In this document: positions 23,310-48,872 of the stretch, piece after piece
Position numbering within the stretch: position 1 is the stretch's first letter
Layout of the letters: the number at the start of each line of letters is the position of its first letter
Assembly: GCF_021869535.1 (NCBI RefSeq)
Contig: NW_026262675.1
Location: 1,302,001 to 1,366,000 of the forward strand
DNA length: 64,000 nucleotides
Direction of reading: 5' to 3'
Origin: Mytilus californianus
Lineage: Eukaryota
Notes under the pieces: model-generated
Databases searched by the model: none
The model's input: only the letters and a program-made list of their open reading frames with translations
Told to the model about the DNA's origin: nothing
Program-made: the position numbers and the translations under genes

Positions 23310-23344
23310 TTAAGATGCAGAATTCTTTATCATTGTCTCAAATT
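23310..23344 (-). CDS. Gene B terminal exon ([11 protein letters not shown])
   Basis: Acceptor ttcatttcag, phase 1, TAA stop. Confidence 0.82.
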
Positions 23345-26300
23345 CTGAAATGAAATTTAATAAAATATGTAAGCAAGGCAAAACTTATACCTCCTAGTCT
23401 GTTATGTGTATATAAGTCTAATAGTGAAGAATATGCTTTAATATATAATTTTTACTGCTAGTAACTGATAAAATACGTTTTTTTTTCGGGTTACACTACT
23501 TACTCATAGGTTCATCAAAACGACGGTTGCATTCCAGCATGCAGCCACTACACTAGCTTATACCCTTTCCGTTTGTCTTCCAACAATTACTAGAGTCTAG
23601 GCATTTTTGTCCCCCGGGCGACGCGTTGCGGAGGAAATAGAAATACCGGCAATCCGTCCGGTCTTGTTGGCGCTCTCATGTGTACAATTCTTGCCAGATC
23701 TTTATAAAACTTATATCATAGGTTTATATCACCAATGTCTCGAACATGTTCGAAAATTGGTGCCGATCAATTATTTTTGAAAGAGTTATGTCCCTTTGAA
23801 ATGTTAATATATGAAAAAATTCATTGTTAGCGTTGTCATGTGTATAATTCTTGTCAGATTTTTATGCAACTTATATAATTGGTTTATATTACTAATGTCT
23901 CGGACAATTTCGAAATTTGGTGCCGATCAATTATTTTTAAAAGAGTTGTGCCCTTTGAAATATTAATTATATGAAAAAATTGCATTGTTAGCGCTATCAT
24001 GTGTACAATCTTTACCAGATTTTTATGAAACTAATATCATAGGTTTATATCAGCAATGTCTCGGACAAGTTCGAAAATCAGTGCCAATCAATTATTTTTA
24101 AAAGATTTGTGCCCCTTTGCAATATGAACTATACGGAAAATTGCATTGTTAGCGCTCTCATGTGTACAATTCTTTGCAGATTTTTAGGAAACTTATTACT
24201 AGTATATTATAGGTTTCTATCAGCAATGTCTCGGACAAGTTCGAAAATTGGCGCTGATCAATTATTTTTAAAAGAGTTATGCCCCCTGAAAATATTAAGT
24301 ATATTGGAAATTACATTGTATTTGCTCTCAAGCCTTTATTTCTATAAAGTATTTATGAGAAGTTTAAAAGAAAAAAAATTGTTATTGTCCTTGGATAGAT
24401 AAAATATGTGCAACGCGGGGACATTGGAACTCTGTTCATTTATAATTCCAATACATGAAGTGGTTAATGATACATATGGTATTGATGAATATTTGTATCC
24501 AACCAATAAATTCTTTGGCAATTTAACCCTTTCCGCACCCATTGTATAAAAAATTTAATCAATATGTGGTTGTCAATGATCTCAGAAGATGATTGGATGG
24601 GTCATAACTTTTATCAGCTCACTGGATGAATCAAAATGTGCTAATAGGTGTTAATAAAATTGACAACTTTGTGGAATGTGGAAGGCACCTCGAAGGGGAT
24701 TTTCGTTTATCAAAAATGAAAAATTATTTGATAATCATTAGAGAAACAGATTCTTACATAGTAACTCGTGGATTATCGGATTTATCCAATCTCGATAGTA
24801 AAACTATCAATTTTAAAGTCCTCGCCGAGGCTCGGACTTTAAAATTCGATGATTTAACTATCTCGATTGGATAAATCCGATAATCCACTGGTACCAATGT
24901 AAGAATCGAGAATCTATAGTTATTGTTTAAAAATTAGCTTAAATCTTGAAATAAACTGTTTATTTGTTTTTAAAAAATGATTACATTAGAGGCAACAATA
25001 GTTTACCGATGTTCAAATCGTATCTCTAGTGAGTAAATTAACTGAACAATATATAATCATAGAAGAGTTCTGGATTTATTTATACTGCCTTTAGAACTAT
25101 AAGTATACCAAATAGTGTTCATACCTTCAAAATCAATCACACCGTCTTTCTTAAGATCAGCTCCATCTATCATTAGTTTAATTTCATCCTCAGAACATTT
25201 TATCCCAAGACCAGAAAAGACTTTCTGAAGATTATCACATGTAATTAATCCAGTGTTATCAACATCAAACACGTTAAATGTCTCTAGAACAACATCATCC
25301 TCGTTTTCTCCATTGGTTAATACCTTGTCCTTCATCATTTCAACAAATTCGTCGATCTCAATTGTTCCATTTCCTACAAAATAACCGACCTACTTATATT
25401 TAATGTAGAAGAGCATGCCAGAATTTAATTTTGATACAGAGAGACAATTTTATTTGTTGTTCCTTATTTAACAAAAAAGATTCGAATTTGCAGTAATGCT
25501 TGTGTGAAATAACGAGCAACAAAAACGAACACTTATTAATTGCGCAGTTTATAAAGTGTAGTTTTGAAGTTAAAAAGTTAATGAAGAGTTTTTACTCATA
25601 TCTATTTATAAGGGTAAATATAGTCGGTTCAAAAACACACTACAAAACCTTCGTTTTAGTTTAGTTTAGTTCAAACTGCGTAGTCCCCCCACTGCAAAAT
25701 GTTATTTCTCAAAGAATGAAAGTGATGAAAATTAATCAAATCTCTCGGTCCTAAACAACAGACAAGTAAGTCGCTCATTTGAAATGATGTGAAATGCTTT
25801 TCACGTTTACTTTACAAAAATTAATGCGAGTTAGATTTTTAAAAGTACATTTTGTACTTCCGAATCGGTACAAATTCGCGTTTTTTTCTTCTCCAAATTA
25901 CCCTTTTATTTTCTGTGCAATGTGATCAGGTAAGCATTTAGCGTGATTATCGAGGTCGCATTTGTCTATTTGATAGTTTTTTTCTAACGCCAGTGTCAAA
26001 TTCAGGACGAGAACAAATTACCAATATGCTTTGTAAATCAGCATAGGGGACCGAAATGAAAGGTGACAATTTCAACTCATTGTTAAAGGCTATACAGTGA
26101 CCAATAATTGCTTATATCTCCGTCATTTGAACTTTGGTGGATAATTCTCTCATTTGCAATCATATCACATCATTATTTTTTATGCAGTTGCTTGGCACTA
26201 TGCTTTCACGCGTCATCTTCAATTTAACGTCCAAATTCCGACCGGACATAAATGCGTATTGAGTATTACTGACAGATTAGAAAAGTCCAGAGAGGGTCAT

Positions 26301-29300
26301 AATTCTACATCCAGGTGAATCTCTTGGTACCGATGTTTGAAGTTTACTGTCATTTTAGATCAAAGTAACACAAACAAAGTAGTAAAAAGGGTACAGTATA
26401 CCAAAGGGACAACGAAAAACCATAAATTAAACCATGAAGTAAACAGTATAATCATAAGAATTAAAGACGAACAAACAAACAATCCAATAAGATAACACAG
26501 ACAACAAAAGATTCAGCACCACCTACCCCTAAAAAACTTGAGATGAACTCAGGTGTTCCGAATGGTAAATAGTTTCTGCTCCATTAGTGACACCAGTCTT
26601 AATGCTTATTTTAAATTACAAATGTAAAAACATTTTGAGAGAGTCGCATTTGGTTATGTTATAAATTAGGAAAAGAAGATGGGGTGTGTCTACGACACGA
26701 TGTCATCTGATAATGTCATCTGATACAGATATTCCATAACAGTCAGCCAAATAACGATGCCACCCCAAAACGTGGCTTAAACTTTACTATTAAGGAGCCA
26801 AAGATTCAATTTATGTTGATTCAATAATGTAAATTAAGTTTAAATATAAAATAAAAAAACGAAGAAAATGTATTTGATATGAATAAAATATGTGGTTTAT
26901 GTCAACGAGACAACAACCGTTCGACAAAAATAGCCAAAAATGAGGCGGGCAAATGATATCTAGAATGTTTTAGCAAAATTATTATTTATAGATATTTGGT
27001 TATATACTAATCAGCAGCATTATATTTTCATGTGTATATTTATAGTCCACAAACCGTCTTCATCAACTTCATTTATCATATCCTGAAGTTCGGCCTCAGT
27101 TGGATTCTGTCCAAGTTGCCTTAAAACTGTGCCTAGTTCTTTTGAAGTAATAGTGCCTGAATCATCGTCATCAAACAGTTTGAAAGCTTGTTTGAAATCT
27201 AAATAGTAATACAGACATAATCGAAATTAAATAAGGGTAAGTTACTGCAAGCTTCTGTTTTGTATTTAAATAGATTAAAACATAATGTAGATCTACCGTA
27301 AACATGTTCATTGCGGAACTTTTCTCAAAGTGGATGTGTTAAACGATTGGCACGACTGTATAAAATAGTTTACTCGTTAAACAATTAACAAACATTTGCA
27401 GACATTAACAGTCATCAGATATTGTCTTGTTTTAAGTGCATGAAATATTTCTAAATAGATAATATTCAAGAAATCAACAATCAACCAATATTTTCATATC
27501 CTGAAATTCGGCCTCCGTTTGAGTTGCCTTAAAACTGTACCTTGTTCTTTTAATCGATTGCAGGCGCGGATCCAGGATTTCATTTGGGGGGCGCTCCTCA
27601 GAATTAGGACCATATTTTGAAAAACAAATTGACTGTAATTTTACCTATAAATAACTTTTTTTTTCTTTTTTTAAGGGTAGCGGGTGCGCCTCAGTCTGAA
27701 TCAGAGCCTGGATTGGTTATTAATTCATTGTTTTATAATTGTGTGATGAACCCCCAGTGTCAAATAGTTAATGAATACACAGAACAAGAATTACAAAATT
27801 GACAAAACTATAAAAAGTAAGGATCTGTAATGTGGGTCGATCGCAATAAAGGGCGATGCAACTTAAGACTGCCTCTTAAAAAAGGTGGAATATTGCATTT
27901 GATAGATGCAGAACATTTGCCTTGCAATAGGCCAACTGCGAACCCTCATAGAGTTGATGCAATGGTTCTTTCCAAATGTACGTGGCACTCTACGTACACG
28001 AGGCATCTGATTTAGCGTCCCCGTTCCGAACGAATGTGCCTGCTGGTTTACAAATCCCGCACAGACACACAGACGCCCTTCTTTGGCATGGATTTTAATG
28101 CCATATCGGACCATGTCTCTATACCCCAGTCAATCAATGGGGTTAAATGTGTTTGAAGAAAAGTTTTACCTGCTAAAATGTCTGGTGGTATCTCAATTTC
28201 TTTTGGTGTTTCCGGTGTTTGCCGACGAGACGCTCTGCTTGTGCTTGCCTGAAATTATCCATTCTATGAAAAATTTAAACTAAAACTGAACTACAACCTT
28301 TATTTTCAAGGTGATATAAATAAAACGAATTTACGTTTATCCATTATATACCATAAAAGTCAAATTTGAAAGAATTGCGAGCTGGCCTTCCTCCTCCAAT
28401 TTATATAAATGTTACAAAATACATTTTCTAAGCCCCATTCCTACTTCTGATTAAAGTGAGATACAACAATAAAAAGGTCCACAAAACCATAAAGCATCGT
28501 AGATGACAATGAAACTAATACTAGTATGTGGTTTAGGAGAGTTGACGATATAAATACACACACTCTCTTTTGTATATACATATAAGTACATATAAAAATA
28601 AGGTGATGTGGTATGATTGTCAATGATACAACTATATATCAGATACCAAGAATAGAAGATGTATACAACTGTTTACTGTCATAATCCCGCTGAAAATCAA
28701 AATTCAAACCAAAGATGCACTACGAATTTATCTTAAAGAATCTGTAAGAGTTTAATTTTAAAATCAAATCAAGGGTAAGTACAGAAGAATTTGCAGACAC
28801 AAATTCATATTCCTTTCGAAGATATGGCAAAGTACAGATTTCTTTTTAGAATTAACATATTTGGATAAAAATAGTAAGTCCTTTAAAACATATCTAAAAA
28901 ATCCAGGTAAAAGTTACATTCCGTGGTTTAGAAGAGCACATATCTAAATGTTTGCCTATCTTTTTAACTTAAAGCAAATTCATTATATTCAGTATATTGC
29001 GATTGAACCCCTCCCCCCCCAAAAAAAAACAACGTAGAAAAAAATCCGATTTCAATGTCATTAGTTATAATAGATTCTCTGATAGATTATTTACATCAAT
29101 TGTTCAGAAAGATATAATATGCAGACGTAAGAGGTGTTTAACAAAGTAAAGAAGGTTGTCTATTCCAATCTCCATAAAACAATTACCAGATAAACACGAT
29201 TGGGAACTATCATGGCTTTAAATATAAAAGCTAAAACCCAAATTAACGGTTTAGAATTGATTCCCTCTCTCTGTTTCACTCTCTGTTTCACTTTTGGAAA

Positions 29301-29359
29301 AATACATCTCTATTCGTCGAAAAAGAAAATAATGAATTGTAAATTAAAATACTTACCAT
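23310..29359 (-). CDS. Calmodulin/centrin-like gene B (169 aa, basic N-terminal extension), spliced
   Basis: Exons 29357-29359 (ATG|gtaagt), 28170-28248, 27055-27198 (144 nt), 25125-25373, 23310-23344. Product: [169 protein letters not shown]. Confidence 0.88.
23604..24330 (+). mobile_element. HINE-like element with about four 161-bp internal tandem repeats
   Basis: Unit starts at 23670, 23830, 23991, 24152; 5' hairpin-like ttttgtcccccgggcgacgcgttgcgg. Confidence 0.7.
24768..24888. repeat. 121-bp fold-back palindrome
   Basis: 23-bp perfect outer arms gtggattatcggatttatccaat and 13-bp inner arms aattttaaagtcc. Confidence 0.85.
25125..25373 (-). CDS. Gene B exon 4
   Basis: Acceptor tttgtag, [10 protein letters not shown]...GVIDFE, donor gtatga, 249 nt. 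Confidence 0.92.
27055..27198 (-). CDS. Gene B exon 3 (EF1)
   Basis: Acceptor tatttag, [48 protein letters not shown], donor gtttgt, 144 nt. Confidence 0.93.
27494..27551 (-). pseudogene. Degenerate partial copy of gene B exon 3
   Basis: aaaagaacaaggtacagttttaaggcaactc-aaacggaggccgaatttcaggatatga versus exon AAAAGAACTAGGCACAGTTTTAAGGCAACTTGGACAGAATCCAACTGAGGCCGAACTTCAGGATATGA. Confidence 0.8.
27561..27710. mobile_element. Short MITE with CAG...CTG ends and 5-bp TSD (GATTG)
   Basis: caggcgcggatcc...gaatcagagcctg flanked by gattg at 27556-27560 and 27711-27715. Confidence 0.65.
27830..28130 (+). mobile_element. SINE-like element with a Nin-domain-like core
   Basis: ggttctttc...tacacgaggcatctgatttagcgtc...ccgaacga resembles the conserved Nin-SINE central domain; recognised from memory, not aligned. 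Confidence 0.4.
28170..28248 (-). CDS. Gene B exon 2 (N-terminal extension)
   Basis: Acceptor tttcag, [26 protein letters not shown](D), donor gtaaaa; phase 0 in, phase 1 out, open frame. Confidence 0.75.
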
Positions 29360-29767
29360 TATTCCTTCAGGATTACGACGACAGTGACATCCATTTATTG
29401 TGTGTTTGAAGGCCGAAATCCATTCTTGTGAATTAACATATTTAATAGATAACAATTTAAATTTAAACATTCTTTTATTTGAATTAATATTCTTTACAAA
29501 ACAATAACCGTACATTTTGAATAATTTAAACCAGACATCAGATAAATAATGAAATAAATCAAGACAACCCATTGTGTTATTTCTGAACTGACTATAGCCT
29601 TTATTACGTATATGGAGCTTAAAGATCGCACTTCGTTGGTAATATTACCTTATATAGAATCCTGGGTTTTGATTGGGTATAGCTGGTGTATTTTTTCATG
29701 TATTTCATTTAGTAAGATTAAAATTGTTCATATTTCATTATCACCGCTATATATTCACAAGGATCTG

Positions 29768-30854
29768 TTTTTATCTCACCTTTCCACAGGAAATGTGAGC
29801 TTTTGCCATCACTTGGCGTCCGTCGTCGTCTGTCGTCGTCCGTTGTCGTCCGTCCGGTGTAAACTATTTCAAACATCTTCTTCTCTGAAACTACTGAACC
29901 AATTCCAACCAAAATTAAGCTGAATGATCCTTACGTTATTTGGATAAAGTTTGTGTTTTATTTTCTGTTTCGTCAAAAAACATGGCCGCCATGGCTGAAA
30001 ATTGAACATAGGGGCCAACTGTAGTTTTTGGCTTATATCTCAAAAACTAAAGCATTTAGAGCAAATCTGACATGATGTAAAATGTTAATTTTGTCAAGTT
30101 CTATCAGCCCTGAAATTTTCAGATGAATCTAACAACCCATTTTTGGGTTGCTGCCACTAAATTGGTAATTTTAAGGAAATTTTGCAGTTTTTTGTTATTA
30201 TCTTGAATATTGTTATAGATAAAGATAAACTGTAAACAGCAAAAATGTTCAGCAAAGTAAGATCTACAAATAAGTATTTATATGACCAAAATTGTTAATT
30301 GACCCCTTAAGGAGTTATTGCCCTTTAAGGACAATTTTACACAATTTGTTTATCATGTTTTCTAACTTTACAAAATCTTCTCCTCTGAAACTACTGAACC
30401 AAATGAAACCAAACTTAAGCTGAATGATTCTTAGATTATCAAGAATAAAGTTTTTATATGACCAAAATGGTCACTTGACCCCTTAAGGAGTTATTGTCCT
30501 TTAAAGACAATTTTTCACAACTTGTTAATCTAGTTTGCTTACCTTAAAAAATGTCTCCTTTGAAACTGCTGAATCAATTTCAGCCAAACTTGGGATGAAA
30601 AAGTTTCAGAGTACTAGTATAAAGTTTTTATTTTATTTCCTTTTACCTCAAGAAACATAGTCACTATGGCTAAAATGGAACATAGGGGTAAAATGTATTT
30701 TTTTGCTTTTGAAGAAAAATGACAGATACAAAGAACATTTAAATGTCATTTTTAAGCCACCCATTAATATATATTGAAAAGCAAAAATAATCATTGATGA
30801 AAGACTTAAGCAAAACATTATAGGTGAGCGATTCAGGCTCTTGAGAGCCTCTTG
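29768..30854 (+). mobile_element. Helentron/HINE-type element, copy 1
   Basis: T-rich end, subTIR tctcacct / aggtgagcg, (gtc)n microsatellite, 3' stem-loop ggctcttgagagcc; paralogous to 39896-41279. Confidence 0.75.
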
Positions 30855-31662: not shown

Positions 31663-31703
31663 TTAGCTGTCATTGTCATCGTCTTTTAGCATGGTCTCAA
31701 ATT
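31663..31703 (-). CDS. Gene C terminal exon (EFETMLKDDDNDS*)
   Basis: Acceptor ttttttatttcag; shares EFETM with gene B's last exon. Confidence 0.82.
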
Positions 31704-34700
31704 CTGAAATAAAAAACAGCTTCATTATAAGTAATGAAACAGTTATCTAAATGATTTTATGTACAATTATATGTTAATTTGTAAACTTATCTTAACTTAT
31801 ATCCACTTCATTTGAACTTTGGTGGATAGTTGTCTCATTGGCAATCATACTACATCTCCTTTTTTTATATTATATTATGTGCTCTATTTGTACATTTGAT
31901 AAAATTATATCCGTTTTCGACATTGATAACATATAAACTCAATCATGGACAGAACTTATTGTGTTCTATTTGTTCAAAAAGAAACTGGTCAAAGGTACAA
32001 TCATAAACATTATAATCACATTTACCAAAAATTACATTCACAAACAAGAAAACAAAGTTTCAGTATAGAAAATTAGGATCCCAAAACTTCGAGCTTAAAA
32101 GAATAAAACATCAAAATTACATATCAACACGACGACTGACTTATAGAATGAATAAAAGAAAGAAACGCACTGGTCACACGTAGCAAGTTGGTTCCCTTTC
32201 CTCATACTATCAGGAAGTTTTTAACAAAAGACCTTTTAGCTCGAAATAGTGTGCGTATTATATGTCTTTTTGCCTATCTTGTTTTTTTTTAATGTTTAGG
32301 TGATATAACCTTTAAACTTGGTGGTTCTGTATTTGATCAGTTCTCAGTTTTTTATTTAATTCTTCTGTTTTCGCTTGGTCTCAATTATTTGAAGAAAAAA
32401 AACATTTTAGTTAATTAAACATTATTTCATTTTTATTCCATATGGGAGCTATACTGTTTACTCAAAGCTTTTTCCTAGCTTTATATCATGTTAAATATGA
32501 GTAGTTGCATGAAGACTATAGACAATGAAAACAAAATCTTCCTCTAATTTTTTAATAATTATACGCGAATGTCAACAACAAAAACAAAGATTTTTTTCAT
32601 TGTAATGGACAACTTGACAAAAGATGGATTATATGTGCACAATTCTTTCTACTGTTCCGAAGTTTTGGAAGGATGGATGGCTTTCTGGTTAACGTCCATT
32701 GGCAAATTAAATGCATATTCAGGAGGAGAACATATGATTCATAATGATGAAATGTTTGTAGAGATTCTCAGGAAGAAAGAAAAGACGTTCGCATTATCCT
32801 TTAGCTTCACTTTCCGCTATATAGATGATGTTCTCTCACTAAATAATTCAAAGTTTTTTTACTATGTTGAACGCATCTATCCCATCAAATTTGAGATAAA
32901 GGATACTACAGATACAGTTAATTCTGTCTCATATCTTGACTTATATCTAGAAATTGACAATGAGGGTTGGTTGAAGACAAAACTTTACGACAAAAGAGAG
33001 GATTTCAGCTTTCCAATTGTGAACTTTCGATTTCTATGTAGCAACATTCCAGTTTATTTTCGACTGAGCTTGGATGCCCTTTTTGGTATCTTTCGCCTCC
33101 CTTTAGTAGACCTTATGATATTAGGGAAACATTTATTGGCTGTGTATATTTTTTACATTGTTGATTAAAGACATTAGGAAATAAACGCTAAGAACCTTCC
33201 AGACTGAAGCTTACCTTCAAAACCTACTCTGTGGTCTAAATCTGCACCCAGCACCATTTGGTACAATTCACTTGGTTTGACATCTAAACTTAAACATTCC
33301 ATGGCGTCTTGTAGGTCAGAAATCGTAATGAAGCCGTCGCAATCTTTGTCGAAGTAGTTAAATGTTTCCCGTAGCTCCTGTCTGTCCTCACTTAAATCCG
33401 ATTCCGCAAAATCTTCGTGTTTCAGCATTTTTATCACGTCAACGAAAGAACACTTTCCGCTGACTGAAATAGTTCAGATGTTTTAATGAATTTGTTATAT
33501 TGAGTTAATATAAGACATTTGATGGTAATGTTAAATTTCTTCATGTTATTCCAACTTAATCATTTTAAAGCGTTAACCATTCAAAACACCCTTTTCTGGC
33601 TATGATATTTCTCCAGTTTTAAAAACTCGCAGATTTTAAAGTTTCTGAAATAAAAATTGTACTTCCAAATTCCTACTTATATGCGATTACCAACGGCAAC
33701 TTAAGACTAAATTTTTAATCAATCTTAAACTGGGCTACAAGCATTTCTGTGATTAGACTTCGCGTACGCGTGTGTCAAGCCTTGTGTTGTTCATTTGAAG
33801 TTAACCAACATATAAATGTAGGGTATATATAGTTTGTTAGTTATAACGATTGTCATACATTTTATGATGACAAACACGTAAGGTAAAAGCGGTAATTTTT
33901 AATAAATGTCTTATCTTGGTGTTTTATCTTAGTGTTTTATCTTGAACACAGTCTTTGTTGGTGATAAAAAAAACAATAATCATATGAACATGTATTTTAA
34001 AATATGAAAAATAAAAAAGCAGCTTTAACATCAAACTTGCTGAACATCTTACCTTTAGCATTATACACACTTTCGTTTTCTGACCGAAAGTTTAAATCCT
34101 ACACTAGACCCGCTAACATTTTGAATTAGACCTGCATAAATTACCAGTTTCTCAGACACATGGAGTTGTAATAAATGGACAATTTATAATGTATCTTGTG
34201 TCATTGGTTAAAAACACGCTAAAGATTACATACTATACAAGTATTGTTTTACTCACTACCAGAATTCTTCATCAACATGCCGATTTCCGCTTCCGTTGTA
34301 CTAAAACCTAGCTGATTTATAACTATCTTCAAGTCTTTTGTTGACATTGTCTCTTCTGTTTCTGTTGTTTCAGGTATGCTGTTTGTTTTTAACAGTTGTG
34401 AAATATAACTGTCTGGCTTGATATCTTTTGATGATGTCGATGCATTTGCACAGAGTTCGAAAACCTGTCTGTATACTAAAAGAGAGAAAAAAAACTGAAT
34501 ATTTCAATTTCTTTCACCTCATTAACTTAGCTTCTTTTTTTGTTTTGATCTTTCCATACATCATAGTTGATAAGCAATAATACTTAAGAAAGCGATTGTA
34601 AAGATTTGTGGTACTCTATTTACTCAGAGAGTCTCATCTCTCTATTATCAGCTTGATCAGTTAATTGTATAAAAAGGCAGTGAAAAACCCTGGAAATGTT

Positions 34701-37700
34701 CTTAACCCTGTTACGACAGTAATTGTGTTGTTCGTGTGACGATTGGAATAAACTTTTAAACTTTAATAACGCAACACTTAATGGTGAGGGTGGTAAAGGG
34801 TTATTTTCGTGCAACGTTTTCGGCCTTTTTATTTCACGTGTTTTCGTGTTTTGACGTTTTATTTTCTCGTTTTCTCATGTTTGGTTCGACGTGCGTGCTT
34901 CGTGTTTCCCCTTATTCATTTTTCGTGTTTCGTGTCGGTACTCATAATTTCTCGTGCTTGTCCCGCATTTGATTAAAAAGTAAACCGGGACAAATTCAAA
35001 GTCAGCGCGGATATTGTTTTAAATCATTCTACATTTGCAATTCTATTGTATATGTATGGTATGTAATAAAGTCAAGCAAATTACAATGAATAATATTTTT
35101 TTTTCAAATCAGATGCAACTAGCGGACGCTAAAAGGTAACCGCAGGGTCTTCATGTCCATTAATAATGACTCCATTATCTCAAAGAACGGCCGAGTAATA
35201 ACTTCTAGTCCTTTCTTTCATAATATTTACGATTTTATTTCTCGTGCATGCTTCGTTTTTCCCGATTTTTATTTTCCGTGCAACGTTTTTGCGATTTTTA
35301 TTTCACGTACTTCCCTTTTCAGACACCCCTTTTACCACCCTCCTTAATGTGATCTAAAGATCAATTTATCCTTATTTTGAAACTGAAAGGAATAATTGCA
35401 TCAGTTTGAAACTTAACATGTCTCATATGATTTGTTTTTGTTTTAGTATGGCCAATCTGTTGAGCTTAAACATTGAATAAGTGTCAAAACGAAGCATGCA
35501 GAATTAACTGTTTAAAATTCTCGAAAATATAAACTGATATGCTAAAATGTTCTTGATATCAGAAATGTTTACGGTCAACATATCTGTAGTTGTATCCAAT
35601 TTATCCTGATTCTTTGTCCTTCAGGAAATTTGTGTCAATGGTAGATCTTTGGTAGTATCGATATCTGATTGATTGTTTAGACTCGTACGACTAGGACTTT
35701 GATATATTGTATAGAGTTCTTGACTATTGTTGAAGACCGTAAGTTTACCTTCAAATGATATTGTTTGTGTCATTGGGTTGTTGTCTCATTGACCTATTCC
35801 GGACAAAATTTTTTTTTATTATAAAGATAAAAATATTAAATTGGCAACCCCGCAAAGATGAATCCTTGAATGTCGAGTGTCAATGGTAGATCTTTGGTAG
35901 TATCGATATCTGATTGATTGTTTAGACTCGTACGACTAGGACTTTGACATATTGTATAGAGTTCTTGACTATTGTTGAAGACCGTCAGTTTACCTTCAAA
36001 TGATATTGTTTGTGTCATTGGGTTGTTGTCTCATTGACCTATTCCGGACAAAACTTTTTTTATTATAAAGATAAAAATATTAAATTGGCAACCCCGCAAA
36101 GATGAATCCTTGAATGTCGAGTCCCTCTAACTCTTGGGGGTTAACAGGTGTGGGTGCGCTGTGGTATTTTTATTCAGTTAAAGTAAAGTCATTTGCATGG
36201 AGATATAACACTATTTCAAACATAAAAACGTAAAATAAATAAACATTTTTAATGATATTTGAAGCAACTATTTAGATATACAAGCACTAATACAGTATTT
36301 TTAAATTCTCAAAAAGTAAACAATTCTTAAATAAATAAATAACGCAATAATATTAAATATACAACAAATGTCAGTTAAAATAAGAGCACAATTGCAAAGA
36401 CATTTTGAACATTATATATACATTATTAGAAATTACATTGAGTTATACAGCTGTAATGCACTGGATGTTGGTGATGAGCATTTTTGTACTTTATGTATTT
36501 ATTACATACAGAACAAATCAAGGCGAGTATCACTGTCCATATTGTTTAAATCGGTTAGTGAGTGTGAGTTTGTCTGGGATACAAAAAGTTCATTAGCACT
36601 GGTTAACCTGTGGATATCTATTTTGAAGTACACAGTCAATGTGTCGTTGAGGAGAACAGATGAATTTAATCTTCTTTGGAAGAATCTATTAACTGTAACG
36701 ATTGTATCTTCATGGAAAAGAGCAAATGGCGATGAACGCAGTGTCTTTTTGGTCATAATTTTCTCTAAGCTACAGTTGATCAGCGATGATTCAATTGTGG
36801 AGTTGACCTGTGAATAGTTAGAACAGGATAGCAACTTGGCGCTCAACTGGTAGTTTTTGCTGTGCCCAGTAGTACCACTTGGTTTGATGATCATACACCA
36901 TTCTATATCGTGTTGCATTGTACCAAATATAGTAGGGCTGTGTATCTCTTTAGTAAGTTGACTTATGTTGTATACAGTCCACAGATACCCATCATCACAA
37001 GGTTCCAAAGTATGAGTAGACATTTCAGAGTTTTTGTTAAGGAGAAGTATGTCTGCTTTTAGTACATATACTAGTATTATAACATCCCAAAAATTCACAT
37101 ACAATATATAGGGCTGTCAGCTTGTACTCAAAATTATTAAGGTCCTTGATCTTAATTTCTAAGAGAAAACCGACTTTTATGTTTTCTAATCACATTTATT
37201 TTTAATTAATGTTTGCGCAATGAGTACAATTTCTGGCTTCATTAATAGATATGATAATAAAATAAAGTTAGAATTGTTTGGACTATTCACTTTTAATTAT
37301 GTCCAATCATTGTTTTTTAATGACGGGTTTAACCTAGTTAGAAAAAAGGGGAACACTTTATTGATTAATCATTTAATTTTTATAATTGGTGATAGCCTTT
37401 TAATTAGGAATATATGCGCTTGTATTAATAAAGAACGAACACAAGGGGGAAACCAAATTTTATTTCACTTTAATTTTCTTCATGGGGTTATAGACGACCC
37501 TGACCTACTAACCACACCACCACATACGTCACCCTTCAACCTAATATCTAAAGAGCCTATAGAAGCTACCATACTATCAGAACGGCCAAACACTCCGTAC
37601 CAGCAACAACACCGAAGTTGGAGCAAAATGAAAGCAAAAACACAAGCAGATCCAACCCTGCAACAATAGGGACGATAGTCCGCAATATCCTAAAGGATAG

Positions 37701-40700
37701 CCGGATCCTAAAACCCACATATCAGCATTATCAATTTTCCTCATAGACTTGCATTTACAAATTGAATGTAAACTATGGTCATTTGATAATTTTGATCGTA
37801 ATGATTATGTTTTTCTGATTGATAAAAATGTTGTATCAATTAATTTCTTCAAATTTTAAGTAATTCACATTATTTTATTATATTCATGTTATCTATAAAT
37901 AATAATGAAAGAATAAGATTAATTGAGATAGAAGAAAAAATTCGTACCCTGGCAAAAACCAAGTTCGTACCCTGACCATTTCGTACCTCATGAAATATTA
38001 ACAGTATACCATTTCGTACCTCATAGAAGATTAATGTGTATACCATTTCGTACCTCATGGAAAATTTGTATGTATACCATTTCGTACTTAATGGAAAATT
38101 TGTATGTATACCATTTCGTACCTCATGGAAGATTTGTATGCATACCATTTCGTACCTCATGGAAGATTTGTATGCATACCATTTCGTAACTCATGGAAAA
38201 TTTGTATGTATACCATTTCGTACCTCATGGAAGATTTGTATGTATACCATTTCGTACCTCATGGAAGATTTGTATGCATACCATTTCGTACCTCATGGAA
38301 GATTTGTATGCATACCATTTCGTAACTCACGGAAGGTTTGTATGTATGTCACTTCGAACCTCGTGGAAGATTTATATGTGTTTCATTTATTTGTTAAAAC
38401 AGCCTCAATGACTTTTTATTGTAAGGCGACAGAGGTCACGAGAAATATCTAAAATTCAAAATGTAAGCAGCTATGAGATATTATATAGGAATAAAGTCAA
38501 CAAACGATTTTTTTTTAAATCTGTAAAACTGTAATTAAGATATTTATTTCAAATATAAGCTGGCGCTTTAGTAACAGTTCACATTTCTGCCGATAACATT
38601 GATTTTTTTTAAATTTGGTATAAACTTGTAACTAAAGACACGCGTCATACTGACGTGTTGTTTTAAAAAGGTAGCGTTCTATTTAATTGGATTAAAAATG
38701 TTTATTGAATACACGTGCCATTTGAAATTGCAACATGTGCCTAAATATTGATATATTTAGAGTTGAAAAATTAATTAAGGATAAATCCTGCAAACAAACA
38801 AAGTGTAATTAAAACTATTAAAGTTTTCAAGTGCTGCTTAATCAAACCAATCATCGGTCTTTATAAAATTCTTACGACTGGATGCATTTTATTTATGTTA
38901 TATTAAAAAGAAATTAAAATCATCTCAAAATGTTTTATATCTTAAAAAAATGAGAATTTTTACAAATATATGATACGAAATGATAAACATGTATTAAGTC
39001 CATGAGGTACGAAATGGTAGATGAATTTGGCCAATAGGGTACGAAATGATTTTTATCGTGGGTACGAAATGGTAAATGTTGGGTACGAAATGGCAGAGGT
39101 ACGAAATGGTCTAGGTACGAAATGACTTGCTACCGTTTAAATGTGCGGTCGTAAACAATTTGTCTTGTAACAAATGCAAAAATGGCAAGAATCATCAACT
39201 TTCGTCGTTTCGTTGCGACAACTGCTAATTATTTTCTGACTTTCCAGGGTTATTAGTGACTCCAAATGATTTTTTGTTTCCCTTATTCAAACGGCATGTA
39301 CATTTTATTTTCATTAAAAAAATCATTTATACTTCGAGTCAAGAAGCTGAAATTTAAAACGATGAACACCTCGTTGGAAATATCAATCGATAAGATACTA
39401 TGGCTGATTTTTATGTCTTTGTTTTTATGTTGCAGTACCTGTTATTTCCTTTTTACACTGACCTTGCTTTTTGGAACACTTAATCTGAAATAAAGTCGCA
39501 ATTAAAGATGATATTTTTTGTATGGAAATAAAAATTAAGGAGATGTAGTATATTGGATGTGAACAACTATAGGACCTTAAAAATTTTCATATTTATTTTT
39601 TTGGCATAGTCGTGGTCTTGACATATAAATGAAACCGTCATCGAACTACCTCTCATATTGTTATACGTACCATCGTACACTGCCTGGGAATATTTTATTT
39701 TTACCTTCGTATTCCTTAGTGAAAACGTCAGTTTGTGGAGTTTCGTTTATTCCATCTGAAACTGCGGAATATGGGGTCTGTCGTTTTTCAGAATTCTGAA
39801 ATAAAACGTACTGAAATGTCAGTCTTGCTACAAAATCCTTTATGGTTTCAGTTGAAATTGTGAAAATTATCTAAATTATAATTCATTTGGCTGCATTTTT
39901 AGCTCACCTTTCCGGCAAAGGAAATGTGATCTTTTGCCATTACTTGGCGTCCGTCGCCGTCGTCCGTCGTCGTCGTCGTCCGTCCGGTGTAAACTATTTC
40001 AAACATCTTCACCTCTGAAACTACTGAACCAATTCCAACCAAAATTAAGCTGAATGATCCTTACATTATTTGGATAAAGTTTGTGTTTTATTTTCTGTTT
40101 CGTCAAAAAACATGGCCGTCATGGCTGAAAATAGAACATGGGGATAAAATGCAGTTTTTGGCTTATATCTCAAAAACTAAAGCATTAAGAGCAAATCTGA
40201 GGTCGAGTTAAAATGTTCACTAGGTCAGGTTCTATCAGCCCTGAAATTTTCAGATGAATCTAACTACCCATTGTTGGGTTGCTGCCACTAAATTTGTAAT
40301 TTTAAGAAAAATTTGCAGTTTTTGGTTATTATCTTGAATATTATTATAGATAAAGATAAACTGTATACAACAAAAATGGTAAGCAAAGTAAGATCTACAA
40401 ATAAGTTTTATATAACCAAAATTGTCAATTGACCTTTAAGGACAAGTTTACACAATTTGTTAATCATGTTTTCTAACTTTAAAAAATCTTCTCCTCTGAA
40501 ACTACTTAACCAAATAAAACCACACTTAAGCTGAATGGTTCTTAGGTTATCTAGAATACAATTTGTGTTTTATTTTCTGTTTCCTCAGAAAACATGGCCG
40601 CCATGGCTAAAAATAGAACATAAGGTAAAATGCAGTTTTTGACTTATATCTCATAAACTAAAGCATTTAGAGCAAATCAGGCAAGAAGTTAAAGTATTCA

Positions 40701-43628
40701 TTAGGTCAAGGTCTACCTGCCCTGAAATCTCAGCCAAATCAGGTATCTGATTTTTAGGCTATTGCCCCTGAATCCATGATTTTAAGGCAATTTTGCAGTT
40801 TTCGGTTATTATCTTGAATATTATTATAGATAAAGATAAACTGTAAACAGCAAATAAGATCTACAAATAAGTTTAATATGACCAAAATTGTCAATTGACC
40901 CCTTAAGGAGTTATTGCCCTTTAAAGACAGTTTTTCACAATTTGTTCATCTAGTTTGCTTACTTTAAAAAAAAAATCTCCTTTGAAACTGCTGAATCAAT
41001 TTCAGCCAAACTTGGGCTGAATGAGTTTCAGAGTATCTTGTATAATTTTTTTATTCTATTTCCTTGTACGTCAAGAAACATAGCCACTACGGCTAAAATG
41101 GAACATAGGGGTAAATTGTATTTTTTTGCTTTTGAAGAAAATATGACAGATACAAAGAACATTTAAATGGCATTTTGAGCCACTCATTAATATATATTGA
41201 AAAGCAAAAATAATCATTGATGAAAGACTTAAGCAAAAAATTACAGGTGAGCGATTCAGGCTCTTGAGAGCCTCTTGTTTTTATTACGAATGAAAATGTG
41301 GCCAACCAACTATAAATAGAAGAGATGTGGGATTCACCTATACAACAACCCAGCAGAGTAAGACGAGATGCAATGGAAATCTATATATAAACAACCAGAT
41401 ATCTGACAACAATATATACCCCCTAAAACCCTTTTATATGTAATATTCTGCCGAAATATACACAAAAAAGAACTTATTTGAATAAACAGCAATAAATGTC
41501 CTTTCCTAGATTTAGATATTTCAGTTTGACACTGTAAAACTCTGCACAAACACTAACAACATAATGGACGATTTTTCGTTCCCTATTGTTGATTTTCCTT
41601 TCTTTGGACGGTCAAATTTATTGGCACCACCTTACGGTGTTTATTCATCCCTACTCATTCGCCCATGTCTGAAGTGATGTTTTTGATTTCAATGAACGTA
41701 ATCTATGTATTACTGGTAAATTATTAAGTCAATGATTTCGTTACCACAAATTGCTTTAAATCTTTACTGAATTCTTTCATCATTACAAAGATTTGGTTTG
41801 GAAAGTTGACTGTACCTGTTGAAGACTTATTACACACGGGATGTCACATCTTAAATTTTACGGTGATGTTGTCTACCGAGCCCGTAAATTTAGATACCAC
41901 CCAGGTAAACTTATCGATCCTTTAAATAAACTTATTCTGAATGGTTAACAATTCAACACTGTAATTAGATCCTTGAATATTGTTTTATATAAACTTTGAT
42001 TTTGTTATAAATGAATTAAAACCAATCTTGATATCATTGTTATATACATTTGTACATTCACGGTCCTACAATCGGTCGATATCTATATTTTGGCATAGCA
42101 CAAGGTCATGTTTTCTCTTACTGTTAATGACGTCTTTACGCTAAATCCATTGGATGTAGGATGTGTACTGATTGATATTTTAGTCTTAGATACAGTTTTT
42201 TTTTTTATTTATTATAGTTGTCATTGGCTTTAAACTATCCAGTAACGTAACTGCAAGTGTTCTTAGATCTGTTCTTTGTGATTTTGTGTTTTTGTTCAGA
42301 GTTTTTTGTGTTTTTTATCGATCTGTTACACCACTGACCAAAGTTAGGGGGAAGGTTTGGCGATAGCAAACATGTTCACCCCCACCACATAATGTATATC
42401 ATATTCGTTTTTCGTTTACTGTTTTGTACATAAATAATTCTCGTTTGAGTAATTTTACATTTGTCATTTCGGAGCTTTTTATAGCTTACTATGCGGTATG
42501 GGGTTTGCTCATTGTTGAAGGCCGTACGGTGACCTATTGTTGTTAAATTCTACGTCATTTGGTCTTTGGTGGAGAGTTGTCTCATTGGCAATCATACCAC
42601 ATCTTCTTATCTCTATATTATAGTTATTGGCAAACACAATTTGTAAGACTCCAACTTTCTCACAAAGTTACTATATTTAAATGCAATATCTTATGTTGTT
42701 CTAAATTAAAACAAGTACTTTTTCATAATAGAAAATGAACTATTGAAGCCTGGTGTGTTTCGATGTGATTTAAGACGTTAAAGATTGTAACCAGTTTACA
42801 TGAAACAATATCATAGTGTATATAGTCTCGATTTTAAAGTTTGCGCCTTTTATTTAGAATGAATATTGACGTACTTTCTTCTCAATTTTGAATGTGAAGT
42901 TAGTGGTTGGTAAAAGATGCTCTAATATTCGAAATACACTTTATTCTTGTTTATTGTATTTCTGCAAACATCGTGCACATTGAATGCCGCGACAACTTAC
43001 TTGTAGTTTCCATCAGTCCGTGTGGGAAAGAGGATCGTTCAAAGAAAAAAATGTACTATGAATAAAATGAGTTGTGGATATACCTCGATGGTACAGCAAC
43101 CCGCCCAACATCACCATTGAATTTAAAAAGACTTCAAGAGGCCAACTGACATACGGTCTTTATTCAAAATATGCCACGCTCCCCTTTGAACACCTTGGAT
43201 GTTACTGAATATTTTATTCCCGTTAAAACTTTACTGTGAATATCATTCTCGAATGTCATATTCTTATTACTGATTGCTAAGACTATGTATGCATGTAAAC
43301 AGTATCGCGAAATGAAGGCGAAGACTAACCAAATATTCCAATAGTTTCATCACTGCGGATGTAAATAGTGGACAAAAGTAAGCACAGGGTATCAAACTGT
43401 AAATTGTTTTGAATAAAGGGATGCATATTGCACCATATCTAACCACGAATCGGACGTTCATTTTTCATATTTTGTAAAATGCTATTAAAATATATATTTA
43501 GATATTTTGTAAATGGCTAGTTGTTTTAGGTCTTTTGTAAACAGTCATTTTACAATATGAAAAGTCTGAAATTGCCTGAAACTTACATACTGCAAATGTT
43601 ATTAACAAAATCTTACCGTCGAACTCAT
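31663..43628 (-). CDS. Divergent calmodulin-like gene C, spliced, with or without an internal MATH exon
   Basis: Firm exons 34257-34475, 33215-33463, 31663-31703. Probable exon 2 at 39705-39795. Tentative first exon 43617-43628 (ATG AGT TCG ACG|gtaaga). Model gives 203 aa without and 390 aa with the 36510-37070 MATH exon. Confidence 0.65.
32762..33051 (+). mobile_element. Penelope-like RT C-terminal fragment in the last intron of gene C
   Basis: FRYIDDVLSLNN...SYLDLYLEIDNEGWLKTKLYDKREDFSFPIVNFRFLCSNIP. Confidence 0.8.
33215..33463 (-). CDS. Gene C EF3/EF4 exon
   Basis: Acceptor tatttcag, SGKCSFVDVIKM...RETFNYFDKDCDGFITISDL...GADLDHRVGFE, donor gtaagc; 249 nt, the same length as gene B exon 4. 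Confidence 0.9.
34257..34475 (-). CDS. Gene C EF1/EF2 exon with expanded EF1 loop
   Basis: Acceptor ttttctctcttttag, donor gtgagt, 219 nt open: YRQVFELCANASTSSKDIKPDSYISQLLKTNSIPETTETEETMSTKDLKIVINQLGFSTTEAEIGMLMKNSG. Confidence 0.82.
34786..35342. mobile_element. Non-autonomous TIR element (MITE), copy 2
   Basis: TIR gagggtggtaaaggg / cccttttaccaccctc; same internal sequence and orientation as 368-906. Confidence 0.7.
35633..36121 (+). repeat. Near-identical 245-bp tandem duplication
   Basis: Units start at 35633 and 35878. Confidence 0.9.
36502..37070 (-). CDS. MATH (TRAF-like) domain exon/ORF of SPOP type, no BTB domain
   Basis: YLWTVYNI, EWCMIIKPSG, SKNY, KLLSC and LLNDTLTVYFKI align by eye with SPOP MATH motifs YMWTINNF, KWCLRVNPKG, SKDY, LLVSC and LLPDDKLTLFCEV. 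Standalone ORF ATG 37023 to TAA 36502 (173 aa), or internal exon 37070/37052-36510. Confidence 0.82.
37943..39135. mobile_element. Fold-back element remnant with a 34-bp minisatellite
   Basis: About 11 copies of the 34-bp unit gtataccatttcgtacctcatggaagatttgtat at about 37975-38360; inverted ggtacgaaatg repeats at about 39000-39125. Confidence 0.7.
39705..39795 (-). CDS. Probable exon 2 of gene C (NSEKRQTPYSAVSDGINETPQTDVFTKEYE)
   Basis: Acceptor gttttatttcag, donor AAG|gtaaaa. Open only in phase 0 to phase 1, like gene B exon 2, and shares its RQTP and ETP motifs. Confidence 0.6.
39896..41279 (+). mobile_element. Helentron/HINE-type element, copy 2 (extra internal repeat)
   Basis: tttttagctcacct...aggtgagcgattcaggctcttgagagcctcttgttt. 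Confidence 0.75.
41490..41990 (+). mobile_element. Degenerate Penelope-like RT C-terminal fragment
   Basis: FLDLDI...DDFSFPIV...PPYGVY...DFNERNLCITGKLLSQ*FRYHKLL, with stops and frameshifts. Confidence 0.65.
42400..42620 (+). repeat. Representative copy of an abundant interspersed family (ttgttgaaggccgtacggtgacctat...gagagttgtctcattggcaatcataccacatcttc)
   Basis: Partial copies at about 6430-6620, 14185-14420, 26080-26145, 28600-28680, 31805-31870, 44630-44780, 46020-46140 and 57385-57540. Confidence 0.7.
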
Positions 43629-48773: not shown

Positions 48774-48872
48774 ATGGCAGAGAGAAAATTTAGACAACAT
48801 ATTCTCAAAAGAGGGGATGCAGCTAAAATCCGAGATGAAGTTGCCCAGGAGATGCGAGAGAACATTATTCAA
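48774..48872 (+). CDS. DOCK9: DOCK exon 1
   Basis: MAERKFRQHILKRGDAAKIRDEVAQEMRENIIQ|gtaagt. Confidence 0.85.

What the first reader, a model, noticed from the sequence alone, without database searches (positions are those of the whole stretch)
31663..39795. SPOP-type MATH domain as a symmetric phase 1-1 exon inside a calmodulin-like gene: predicted MATH/EF-hand chimera
Seen: a stop-free MATH-coding stretch on the same strand as gene C, between probable exon 2 (39705-39795, phase 1 out) and exon 3 (34475, phase 1 in). It has a consensus-like donor TTC T|gtatgt at 36510/36509 and in-frame phase-1 AG acceptors at 37070 and 37052 (561 or 543 nt, multiples of 3), although their pyrimidine tracts are weak. 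Inclusion gives N-extension, MATH, then degenerate 4-EF-hand lobes (about 390 aa); skipping gives a plain CaM-like protein; read-through of the donor gives a MATH-only protein ending TGT ATG TAA with AATAAA overlapping the stop. Established: SPOP MATH binds degrons while BTB recruits Cullin-3, and symmetric 1-1 exons are the classic exon-shuffling module. Here BTB is absent and the SPOP DWGF substrate-groove motif is replaced (DTIV). Inference: a shuffled, possibly alternatively spliced adaptor coupling a MATH interaction surface to a pseudo-calmodulin, or a BTB-less decoy. I do not know of a described protein with this architecture, but could not search.
Basis: partly seen in the sequence, partly recalled or inferred. 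Interest (0 to 1): 0.85.

Follow-up and report, generated by a model that had tools for sequence, protein, structure and literature searches.

The report
Unannotated MATH-only gene inside calmodulin-like intron
A small conserved protein-coding gene with a SPOP-like MATH domain and no BTB domain sits unannotated inside an intron of a mussel calmodulin-like gene, and comparison with two other mussels indicates it is a separate nested gene, not an exon that fuses MATH to the EF-hands.

Summary
A stop-free minus-strand stretch (37116-36505) encodes a SPOP-type MATH domain.

The window is Mytilus californianus. Its RefSeq product (203 aa, calmodulin-beta-like) joins exon 2 directly to exon 3 and is the longest product on record, so no annotated isoform holds MATH.

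The same nesting occurs in M. edulis and M. trossulus. In all three the ATG-to-stop unit is 522 nt with no indels, 89-95% identical against 71-83% in the flanks, with dN/dS 0.19-0.36 (bootstrap upper bound 0.49). It is real coding sequence, called in none of the three annotations.

Conservation starts at the ATG. The 81 nt upstream are the least conserved part. M. trossulus has a frameshift and an in-frame stop there, M. edulis has lost one of the two proposed acceptors, and both acceptors have poor pyrimidine tracts. A TATA-like box, the start, the stop and a downstream ATTAAA are conserved.

Best reading: an independent single-exon MATH-only gene. The cassette-exon chimera is not supported. 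A fusion from an alternative first exon through the GTATGT donor is not excluded, because the one true RNA run covered neither gene.

The parts
36502..37023 (-). MATH-only ORF: ATG at 37023, 173 codons, stop TAA at 36504-36502. SPOP-type MATH fold in residues 1-140. The tail (residues 142-173) aligns with the MATH-BTB linker and the first residues of BTB.
37104..37110 (-). TATA-like box (CCCTATATA invariant in three species), 87 nt upstream of the ATG. Inferred promoter element.
   Evidence: alignment columns 98-108
37161..37220 (-). Conserved upstream island (85-93% identity, no gaps). Possible promoter-proximal element.
37024..37116 (-). Least conserved part of the block, and frameshifted with a stop in M. 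trossulus. Read as 5' UTR, not coding.
36504..36509 (-). It overlaps codons Cys-Met and the first base of the stop, and is invariant in three species. 5 of 9 matches to MAG|GTRAGT.
36498..36503 (-). AATAAA overlapping the stop. AATACA in M. trossulus and AGTAAA in M. edulis.
36248..36253 (-). ATTAAA conserved in all three species at the end of a conserved 250-nt 3' flank, after which alignment collapses. Inferred poly(A) signal and 3' UTR end.
43617..43628 (-). Host gene exon 1 (ATG AGT TCG ACG, then gtaaga), calmodulin-beta-like.
39705..39795 (-). Host exon 2, phase 1 out. ORF and both splice sites are conserved in M. edulis and M. trossulus.
34257..34475 (-). Host exon 3, phase 1 in and out (degenerate EF-hand 1 and the start of EF-hand 2). 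Acceptor invariant in three species.
   Evidence: contig 17 of run X3
33215..33463 (-). Host exon 4 (the only canonical EF-hand loop, DKDCDGFITISD).
31663..31703 (-). Host exon 5 and stop codon.

Best explanation
The stretch is a separate, single-exon, protein-coding gene nested in the sense orientation inside intron 2 of the Mytilus californianus calmodulin-beta-like gene. Its product is a 173-residue MATH-only protein with three parts: a divergent SPOP-type MATH beta-sandwich, a remnant of the MATH-BTB linker, and the first few residues of a BTB domain. It ends two codons after what may be a former exon/intron boundary (Cys-Met-stop read from GTATGTAA).

Shown: it is coding and under purifying selection in at least three Mytilus species. 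Its start, stop and length are fixed. It has no BTB domain. The aromatic residues of the SPOP substrate groove are replaced.

Inferred: it is transcribed from its own TATA-containing promoter about 60-90 nt upstream of the ATG and polyadenylated at the stop-overlapping hexamer or at the conserved ATTAAA 250 nt downstream. The host pre-mRNA removes it with the intron.

Inferred, weak: as a BTB-less MATH protein it cannot recruit Cullin-3. It would then act as a stand-alone interaction module (adaptor or competitor) with a ligand specificity different from SPOP's.
For: 1. Coding and constrained. The ATG-to-stop unit is 522 nt without indels in M. californianus, M. trossulus and M. edulis. Identity is 89-95% in the ORF against 71-83% in the flanks. 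Differences by codon position are 23/7/28, 21/6/28 and 6/3/19. dN/dS is 0.19-0.36, with bootstrap 95% intervals of 0.07-0.49 and none of 500 replicates reaching 1. Random substitutions at the observed number keep the frame open in only 5-10% of trials.

2. The unit's boundaries are the ATG and the stop. The 60-nt bin just before the ATG is the least conserved in the block (0.63-0.68). The ATG has ACCATGG and GCCATGG contexts in the other two species. The stop is TAA/TAA/TAG at the same codon.

3. M. trossulus carries a 1-nt deletion and an in-frame TAA three codons before the ATG.

4. A conserved CCCTATATA lies upstream. A conserved 3' flank ends at an ATTAAA shared by all three species.

5. 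The RefSeq product of this locus (P0006, 203 aa, the longest product on record) joins exon 2 to exon 3 directly.

6. MATH identity rests. No BTB domain is found anywhere in the window.

7. The tail aligns with the linker and BTB start of a MATH-BTB protein.
Against: No transcript evidence was obtained.
- The only true RNA run (X7, 6% of it read) has zero depth on the ORF, and also on host exons 2 and 3.
- The ORF is called in none of the three NCBI annotations and is absent from the 15-billion-protein collection. This could mean very low or very restricted expression.
- The promoter and poly(A) assignments are motif matches in AT-rich DNA. AATAAA occurs 21 times in the intron.
- The GTATGT donor is invariant, and its phase fits exon 3.
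Confidence: 0.68

Rival explanations
1. Alternative first exon. A promoter in intron 2 starts a transcript at the MATH ATG. The conserved T|GTATGT donor after 36510 is spliced to host exon 3 at 34475. The product is a MATH-linker-EF-hand fusion of about 335 aa that lacks host exons 1-2.
For: The donor hexamer is invariant in three species and leaves phase 1, which matches the phase-1 acceptor of exon 3. The promoter-like conservation upstream of the ATG would serve this transcript equally well.
Against: The donor's invariance is confounded by its coding role (Cys-Met-stop). It matches the consensus at 5 of 9 positions, no better than 122 of 272 GT sites in the intron. The stop codon stays a stop despite a substitution (TAA to TAG in M. 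edulis), and a 250-nt flank downstream of the donor is conserved up to a shared ATTAAA, which fits a 3' UTR better than an intron. No annotated product longer than 203 aa is on record for the locus.
Confidence: 0.1
2. The MATH stretch is a symmetric phase 1-1 cassette exon (37070 or 37052 to 36510) included between host exons 2 and 3, giving a chimera of about 390 aa.
For: In the window the frame and phases fit and no stop intervenes. The first acceptor AG, in frame, is kept in M. edulis.
Against: M. trossulus has a frameshift and an in-frame stop between both acceptors and the ATG. M. edulis has lost the second AG. The stretch between the acceptors and the ATG is the least conserved part of the block. 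Pyrimidine fractions are 0.50 and 0.39, and neither site has the tttcAG/ttttAG ending that all four annotated acceptors share. The annotated product skips it. The exon 2/exon 3 join falls inside what, aligned from memory with calmodulin, is the entering helix of EF-hand 1 (TKEYE-V-YRQVFEL).
Confidence: 0.04
3. A silent relic. The ORF was a functional gene in the Mytilus ancestor but is no longer expressed in one or more of the species, and it has not yet picked up disabling mutations.
For: No expression was seen in run X7. It is not annotated in three genomes whose pipelines use RNA evidence. All three sequences fall below the Pfam gathering score.
Against: Purifying selection is seen on all three pairwise comparisons, including the short M. 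edulis-M. trossulus one (dN/dS 0.19), with no indel in 522 nt while the flanks have many. The host gene was equally uncovered in X7, so that run says nothing. Single-exon ORFs with weak homology are routinely missed by annotation pipelines (general knowledge).
Confidence: 0.12

Closest known systems
SPOP (speckle-type POZ protein), MATH-BTB adaptors of Cullin-3 ligases
   Same: The MATH domain is of the SPOP type by sequence: the best 21 PDB matches are all SPOP, E about 3e-6. It is also of the SPOP type by predicted fold: the top 50 PDB matches are all SPOP MATH, rmsd about 3.1 A over 136 columns. The C-terminal tail aligns with the MATH-BTB linker and the first BTB residues.
   Different: There is no BTB or BACK domain, so no Cullin-3 binding or BTB dimerisation. 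The groove residues Y87, F102, Y123, W131 and F133 (SPOP numbering from memory, placed on the alignment) are S, I, S/P, T and V. Identity is only 21-25%.
MATH-only proteins (a recognised subtype of the MATH family in insects and plants; C. elegans math genes, from memory)
   Same: A single MATH domain with no partner domain. [quoted passage not shown]
   Different: No detectable close relative. An exhaustive search of 1.84 billion representatives gave only three hits, all multi-MATH nematode proteins, two of which also carry a BTB domain, at 26-30% identity. No function is known for this lineage.
Sense-strand nested (intronic) genes in animal genomes
   Same: A complete small gene lies inside an intron of a larger host gene. 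The arrangement is conserved across species.
   Different: From general knowledge, most described nested genes lie antisense to the host. This one is on the host's strand, so its poly(A) signal sits in the path of host transcription.
Calmodulin-like EF-hand proteins (the host gene, RefSeq calmodulin-beta-like)
   Same: The host has the four-EF-hand layout with phase-1 introns. EF-hand 3 is canonical: EF-hand_7 at 44.8 bits and EF-hand_1 at 33.7 bits.
   Different: Pfam detects only the C-terminal pair. The loops of EF-hands 1, 2 and 4 are degenerate, EF-hand 1 carries an insertion, and there is a 30-residue N-terminal extension. The MATH unit is not part of this protein in any annotated product.

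Membership tests
MATH/TRAF-homology domain (Pfam MATH_2, PF22486) | Significant match to the family profile at or above the curated gathering score (32 bits) | tested here: not met
   24.6, 27.9 and 29.7 bits for the three orthologues (E 3e-5 to 8e-7). Each covers 132-134 of the 136 profile positions but falls below the cut-off.
MATH/TRAF-homology domain (Pfam MATH_2, PF22486) | Eight-stranded antiparallel beta-sandwich fold | tested here: met
   The AlphaFold model has eight strands in residues 3-138, pLDDT 70 and pTM 0.67. Foldseek probability is 1.00 to SPOP MATH structures, TM by target 0.72-0.78. The model was built from an alignment of 13 sequences that included MATH domains.
SPOP / MATH-BTB Cullin-3 adaptors | BTB/POZ domain C-terminal to MATH | tested here: not met
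   The ORF stops about 5 residues into the position where BTB starts. There is no BTB Pfam hit. tblastn with two BTB-bearing MATH-BTB proteins (and a third, multi-MATH one) finds no BTB anywhere in the 64 kb.
SPOP / MATH-BTB Cullin-3 adaptors | Conserved substrate-groove residues (Y87, F102, Y123, W131, F133 of human SPOP) | tested here: not met
   HMMER alignment to SPOP chains: KDWGF aligns with EDTIV, FKF with IES, LSLYL with LSAKL. The replacements are shared by the three orthologues. Residue numbering is from memory.
MATH-only proteins | MATH is the sole recognisable domain of a complete ORF with its own start and stop | tested here: met
   The ATG, stop and length are conserved in three species, and no other Pfam family matches.
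Cassette exon of the calmodulin-like gene (symmetric 1-1 exon) | Functional acceptor and donor conserved in related species, with coding constraint extending to both splice sites | tested here: not met
   The acceptors are weak and not conserved in frame, and constraint starts at the ATG. The donor is conserved, but that is confounded by its coding role.
Cassette exon of the calmodulin-like gene (symmetric 1-1 exon) | Junction reads or cDNAs joining it to host exons | tested here: inconclusive
   Run X7 has zero depth on the ORF and on host exons 2-3. No splice joint appears in any of the four runs. The longest annotated product lacks it.
Independent nested gene | Own transcript with 5' and 3' ends inside the host intron | not testable with these tools
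   Only motif and conservation evidence is available: TATA box, Kozak context and ATTAAA.

The most novel reading that the evidence does not exclude
The invariant GTATGT at the end of the ORF is a working, perhaps regulated, splice donor. A promoter in intron 2 would then yield both a MATH-only protein (read-through, intronic polyadenylation) and a MATH-linker-EF-hand fusion spliced to host exon 3. That would couple a SPOP-derived interaction surface to a degenerate calmodulin-like module, an architecture I found no record of.
Probability: 0.08. Interest if true: 0.6.

Novelty: new member of a known kind. Interest (0 to 1): 0.3.

Why it matters
The proposed MATH/EF-hand chimera would have been a new domain architecture, and the comparative evidence speaks against it.

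What remains is more modest. It is a conserved, selected, 173-codon gene that three NCBI annotations of Mytilus genomes missed, probably because it is intronless, nested in a sense-strand intron, and below Pfam's MATH threshold.

It is a clean example of a BTB-less derivative of the SPOP lineage. It apparently arose by truncation at the start of the BTB domain, possibly at a former exon/intron boundary, and was then kept by selection with a remodelled binding groove. It therefore bears on how ubiquitin-ligase adaptors give rise to stand-alone interaction modules or competitors.

It also corrects the host gene models. The M. edulis and M. trossulus calmodulin-like models appear 5'-truncated relative to the M. 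californianus one.

Tried and rejected
1. Decayed pseudogene fragment of a MATH-BTB gene (my first guess). Rejected: dN/dS is 0.19-0.36, there are no indels, and the frame is intact in three species.

2. BTB-coding exon downstream of the donor. None was found by tblastn or by reading all minus-strand frames.

3. My own candidate exon 1 at 39940-39908 (MAKDHISFAGK). Rejected: it lies in a very abundant repeat (depth above 26,000 in X1 and X2). The RefSeq exon 1 is at 43628-43617.

4. Exon structure of the closest relatives. The three hits are Strongyloides UniRef entries with no contig on record, so I could not test whether MATH exons in that family are phase 1-1.

5. Expression.
- Run X7 covers neither gene.
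- Runs X1 and X2 are only guessed to be RNA. They cover single-copy intron at the same depth as exons, so their contig running unspliced across 36510 (36484-36746) proves nothing.
- Run X3 has one exact 205-nt contig inside exon 3 and nothing on MATH. This is too thin to use.

6. Exact look-ups of the ORF products in the assembly collection returned nothing.

7. Earlier notes of this scan returned nothing for the place or for the word MATH.

8. I did not type a spliced protein into any tool. The stored RefSeq protein P0006 served as the spliced reference.

Full report
**1. What is in the sequence**

On the minus strand a frame is free of stops from 37116 to 36505, 204 codons. The first in-frame ATG is at 37023 and the stop TAA at 36504-36502, giving 173 codons. 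It is the longest open frame in the 64 kb outside tandem repeats. At 32% G+C about 7.6% of random codons are stops. By my estimate a 204-codon gap is then expected about once in a thousand such windows.

The product matches Pfam MATH_2 over almost the whole profile, but at 24.6 bits, below the gathering score of 32. Against PDB sequences the best 21 matches are all SPOP (E about 3e-6). An AlphaFold model built on a 13-row alignment has eight strands in residues 3-138, mean pLDDT 70 and a disordered or helical tail from residue 142. Its 50 best PDB fold matches are all SPOP MATH domains (probability 1.00, TM by target 0.72-0.78). "SPOP-type MATH" is therefore correct.

No BTB domain is present in the ORF or anywhere in the window. 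The other aromatic groove positions are also replaced (SPOP residue numbers from memory).

**2. The host gene**

A search with the exon 4 frame found Mytilus calmodulin-like proteins. A second search found P0006, "calmodulin-beta-like [Mytilus californianus]", 203 aa. Its locus L003 is 100% identical to window 53628-21663, so the window is that assembly (GCA_021869535.1).

P0006 is reproduced exactly by these exons, all on the minus strand:
- exon 1: 43628-43617
- exon 2: 39795-39705
- exon 3: 34475-34257
- exon 4: 33463-33215
- exon 5: 31703-31663

The annotated product joins exon 2 directly to exon 3 (…TKEYE-V-YRQVFELCA…). Aligned from memory with calmodulin, that stretch looks like the entering helix of EF-hand 1. 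The collection keeps only the longest product of a gene, and here that is 203 aa. No annotated isoform therefore contains the 187-codon MATH stretch.

**3. Comparative evidence**

The loci of the M. trossulus (L001) and M. edulis (L002) orthologues were fetched with 10 kb of upstream flank. Both hold the MATH ORF on the same strand, between a conserved exon 2 and exon 3. The nesting therefore predates the split of M. californianus from the M. edulis group.

From ATG to stop, the unit compares as follows:
- It is 522 nt in all three species, without a single indel.
- Identity is 89-95% in the ORF, 71-80% in the 180 nt upstream and 80-83% in the 117 nt downstream.
- Differences by codon position are 23/7/28, 21/6/28 and 6/3/19.
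- dN/dS is 0.19-0.36 by three methods. Bootstrap 95% intervals are 0.07-0.49, and no replicate of 500 reaches 1.
- Placing the observed number of substitutions at random keeps the frame open in only 5-10% of trials.

The protein is as conserved (83-85% identity) as the host protein (80-87%). This is coding sequence under purifying selection, not a relic. My first guess of a pseudogene was wrong.

**4. Exon or gene?**

Constraint starts at the ATG.
- The 60-nt bin just upstream (37100-37041), which holds both proposed acceptors, is the least conserved in the whole alignable block (0.63-0.75).
- M. trossulus has a 1-nt deletion there and an in-frame TAA three codons before its ATG. No phase-1 acceptor upstream of the ATG can feed the MATH frame in that species.
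- M. edulis has AA where the window has the second AG.
- The two candidate acceptors have pyrimidine fractions of 0.50 and 0.39 and end in atactAG and aaagcAG. The four annotated acceptors have 0.56-0.94 and all end in tttcAG or ttttAG.
- The ATG is invariant and sits in ACCATGG and GCCATGG in the other two species.

The cassette-exon model therefore fails the conservation test.

The candidate donor T|GTATGT is invariant. However, it is also the codons Cys-Met plus the start of the stop, so its conservation is uninformative. It matches MAG|GTRAGT at 5 of 9 positions, no better than 122 of the 272 GT sites in the intron.

Several features point to a transcription unit of its own:
- CCCTATATA is invariant 87 nt upstream of the ATG, and a conserved island lies at 37220-37161.
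- The stop stays a stop (TAA, TAA, TAG).
- The hexamer over the stop is AATAAA, AATACA or AGTAAA in the three species.
- About 250 nt of 3' flank remain conserved (up to 92%) as far as an ATTAAA shared by all three at 36253-36248. Beyond it the alignment collapses.

A conserved flank that ends at a poly(A) signal fits a 3' UTR better than the start of an intron. These are motif-level inferences in AT-rich DNA, not proof.

**5. RNA**

The one read-laying run used the only true RNA run (X7, raw reads, about 6% read) and three runs of guessed type. X7 has zero depth on the MATH ORF and also on host exons 2 and 3. All its reads lie on repeats. It therefore says nothing about splicing.

X1 and X2 come from a related organism (about 5% divergent). 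They hold a contig that runs unspliced across the donor (36484-36746). They also cover single-copy intron at the same depth, so they may be DNA. X3 has an exact 205-nt contig inside exon 3 and nothing on MATH. No splice joint of any kind was reported. Expression of the ORF is therefore unproven.

The ORF is called in none of the three annotations and is absent from the protein collections.

**6. Origin and likely working**

An exhaustive search of 1.84 billion representatives gave only three hits. All are Strongyloides multi-MATH proteins, two of which also carry a BTB domain, at 26-30% identity. True SPOP orthologues would fall above the E-value cut-off at that database size.

The tail …SLTDLNNMDSDTRLDLFCM aligns with the linker and first BTB residues of a MATH-BTB protein (…SLDYENLYDPSSFYDCVIKV…). 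The frame ends two codons into a GTATGT. The simplest history, which is inference, is a partial DNA copy of a MATH-plus-linker exon of a SPOP-like gene. That copy reads into its former intron and was later kept by selection with a remodelled groove.

Without BTB it cannot dimerise through BTB or recruit Cullin-3. Without the SPOP groove aromatics it is unlikely to bind SPOP-type degrons. It most likely acts as a stand-alone MATH interaction module. MATH-only proteins are a recognised subtype of the family (PMC12785250).

**7. Verdict**

- A fusion from an internal promoter through the GTATGT donor cannot be excluded without transcripts (about 0.1).
- The finding is a new, unannotated member of a known kind, nested in a host gene, and of moderate-to-low interest.

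Noticed in passing
L001:32-122 and L001:~9960-10221; L002:~4010-4100 and L002:~9880-10100: The NCBI models of the M. trossulus (161 aa) and M. edulis (142 aa) orthologues start inside exon 3. Yet exon 2, its splice sites and the 5' part of exon 3 are conserved and open in both. These models look 5'-truncated relative to the 203-aa M. californianus model.
   Followed up: partly
window 39913-40100: An extremely abundant repeat (summed contig depth 26,000-37,000 in runs X1 and X2; most RNA reads of X7 in the stretch fall here). It contains a GAC/GACG-rich run and an ATG-to-GTGAGC stretch that mimics a first exon. Related copies lie near 30000-30700 and 40250-41130.
   Followed up: partly
window 32569-33168 (+): A 199-aa open frame on the opposite strand inside host intron 4. 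It has no Pfam match. It contains YIDDVL-like and KLYDKREDFSFPIVNF motifs that, from memory, resemble fragments of a repeated invertebrate mobile-element protein.
   Followed up: no
window 35624-36030 (-): Two direct copies of about 245 nt, 98% identical, in intron 2 (each with an open frame DNNPMTQTISFEGKLTVFNNSQELYT…). They lie just downstream of the MATH unit's conserved block.
   Followed up: no
window 37870-38450: A tandem array of a 34-nt unit, open in several frames on both strands, in intron 2. It is covered by many contigs in X1-X3, so it is a dispersed satellite.
   Followed up: no
window 3708-5120 (+) and 52210-52764 (both strands): Long tandem-repeat arrays that produce 470-aa and 184-aa open frames (units of about 23 and 19 codons). 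The second lies within the span of the annotated DOCK-family gene.
   Followed up: no
window 23310-29515 (-) and 48774-53628 (+): Annotated neighbours. A second EF-hand gene (AIF-1/EF-hand families, 221 aa) lies directly downstream on the same strand. A DOCK-family gene (2147 aa product, cut by the locus end) lies on the opposite strand upstream. M. trossulus also has the second EF-hand gene downstream.
   Followed up: no
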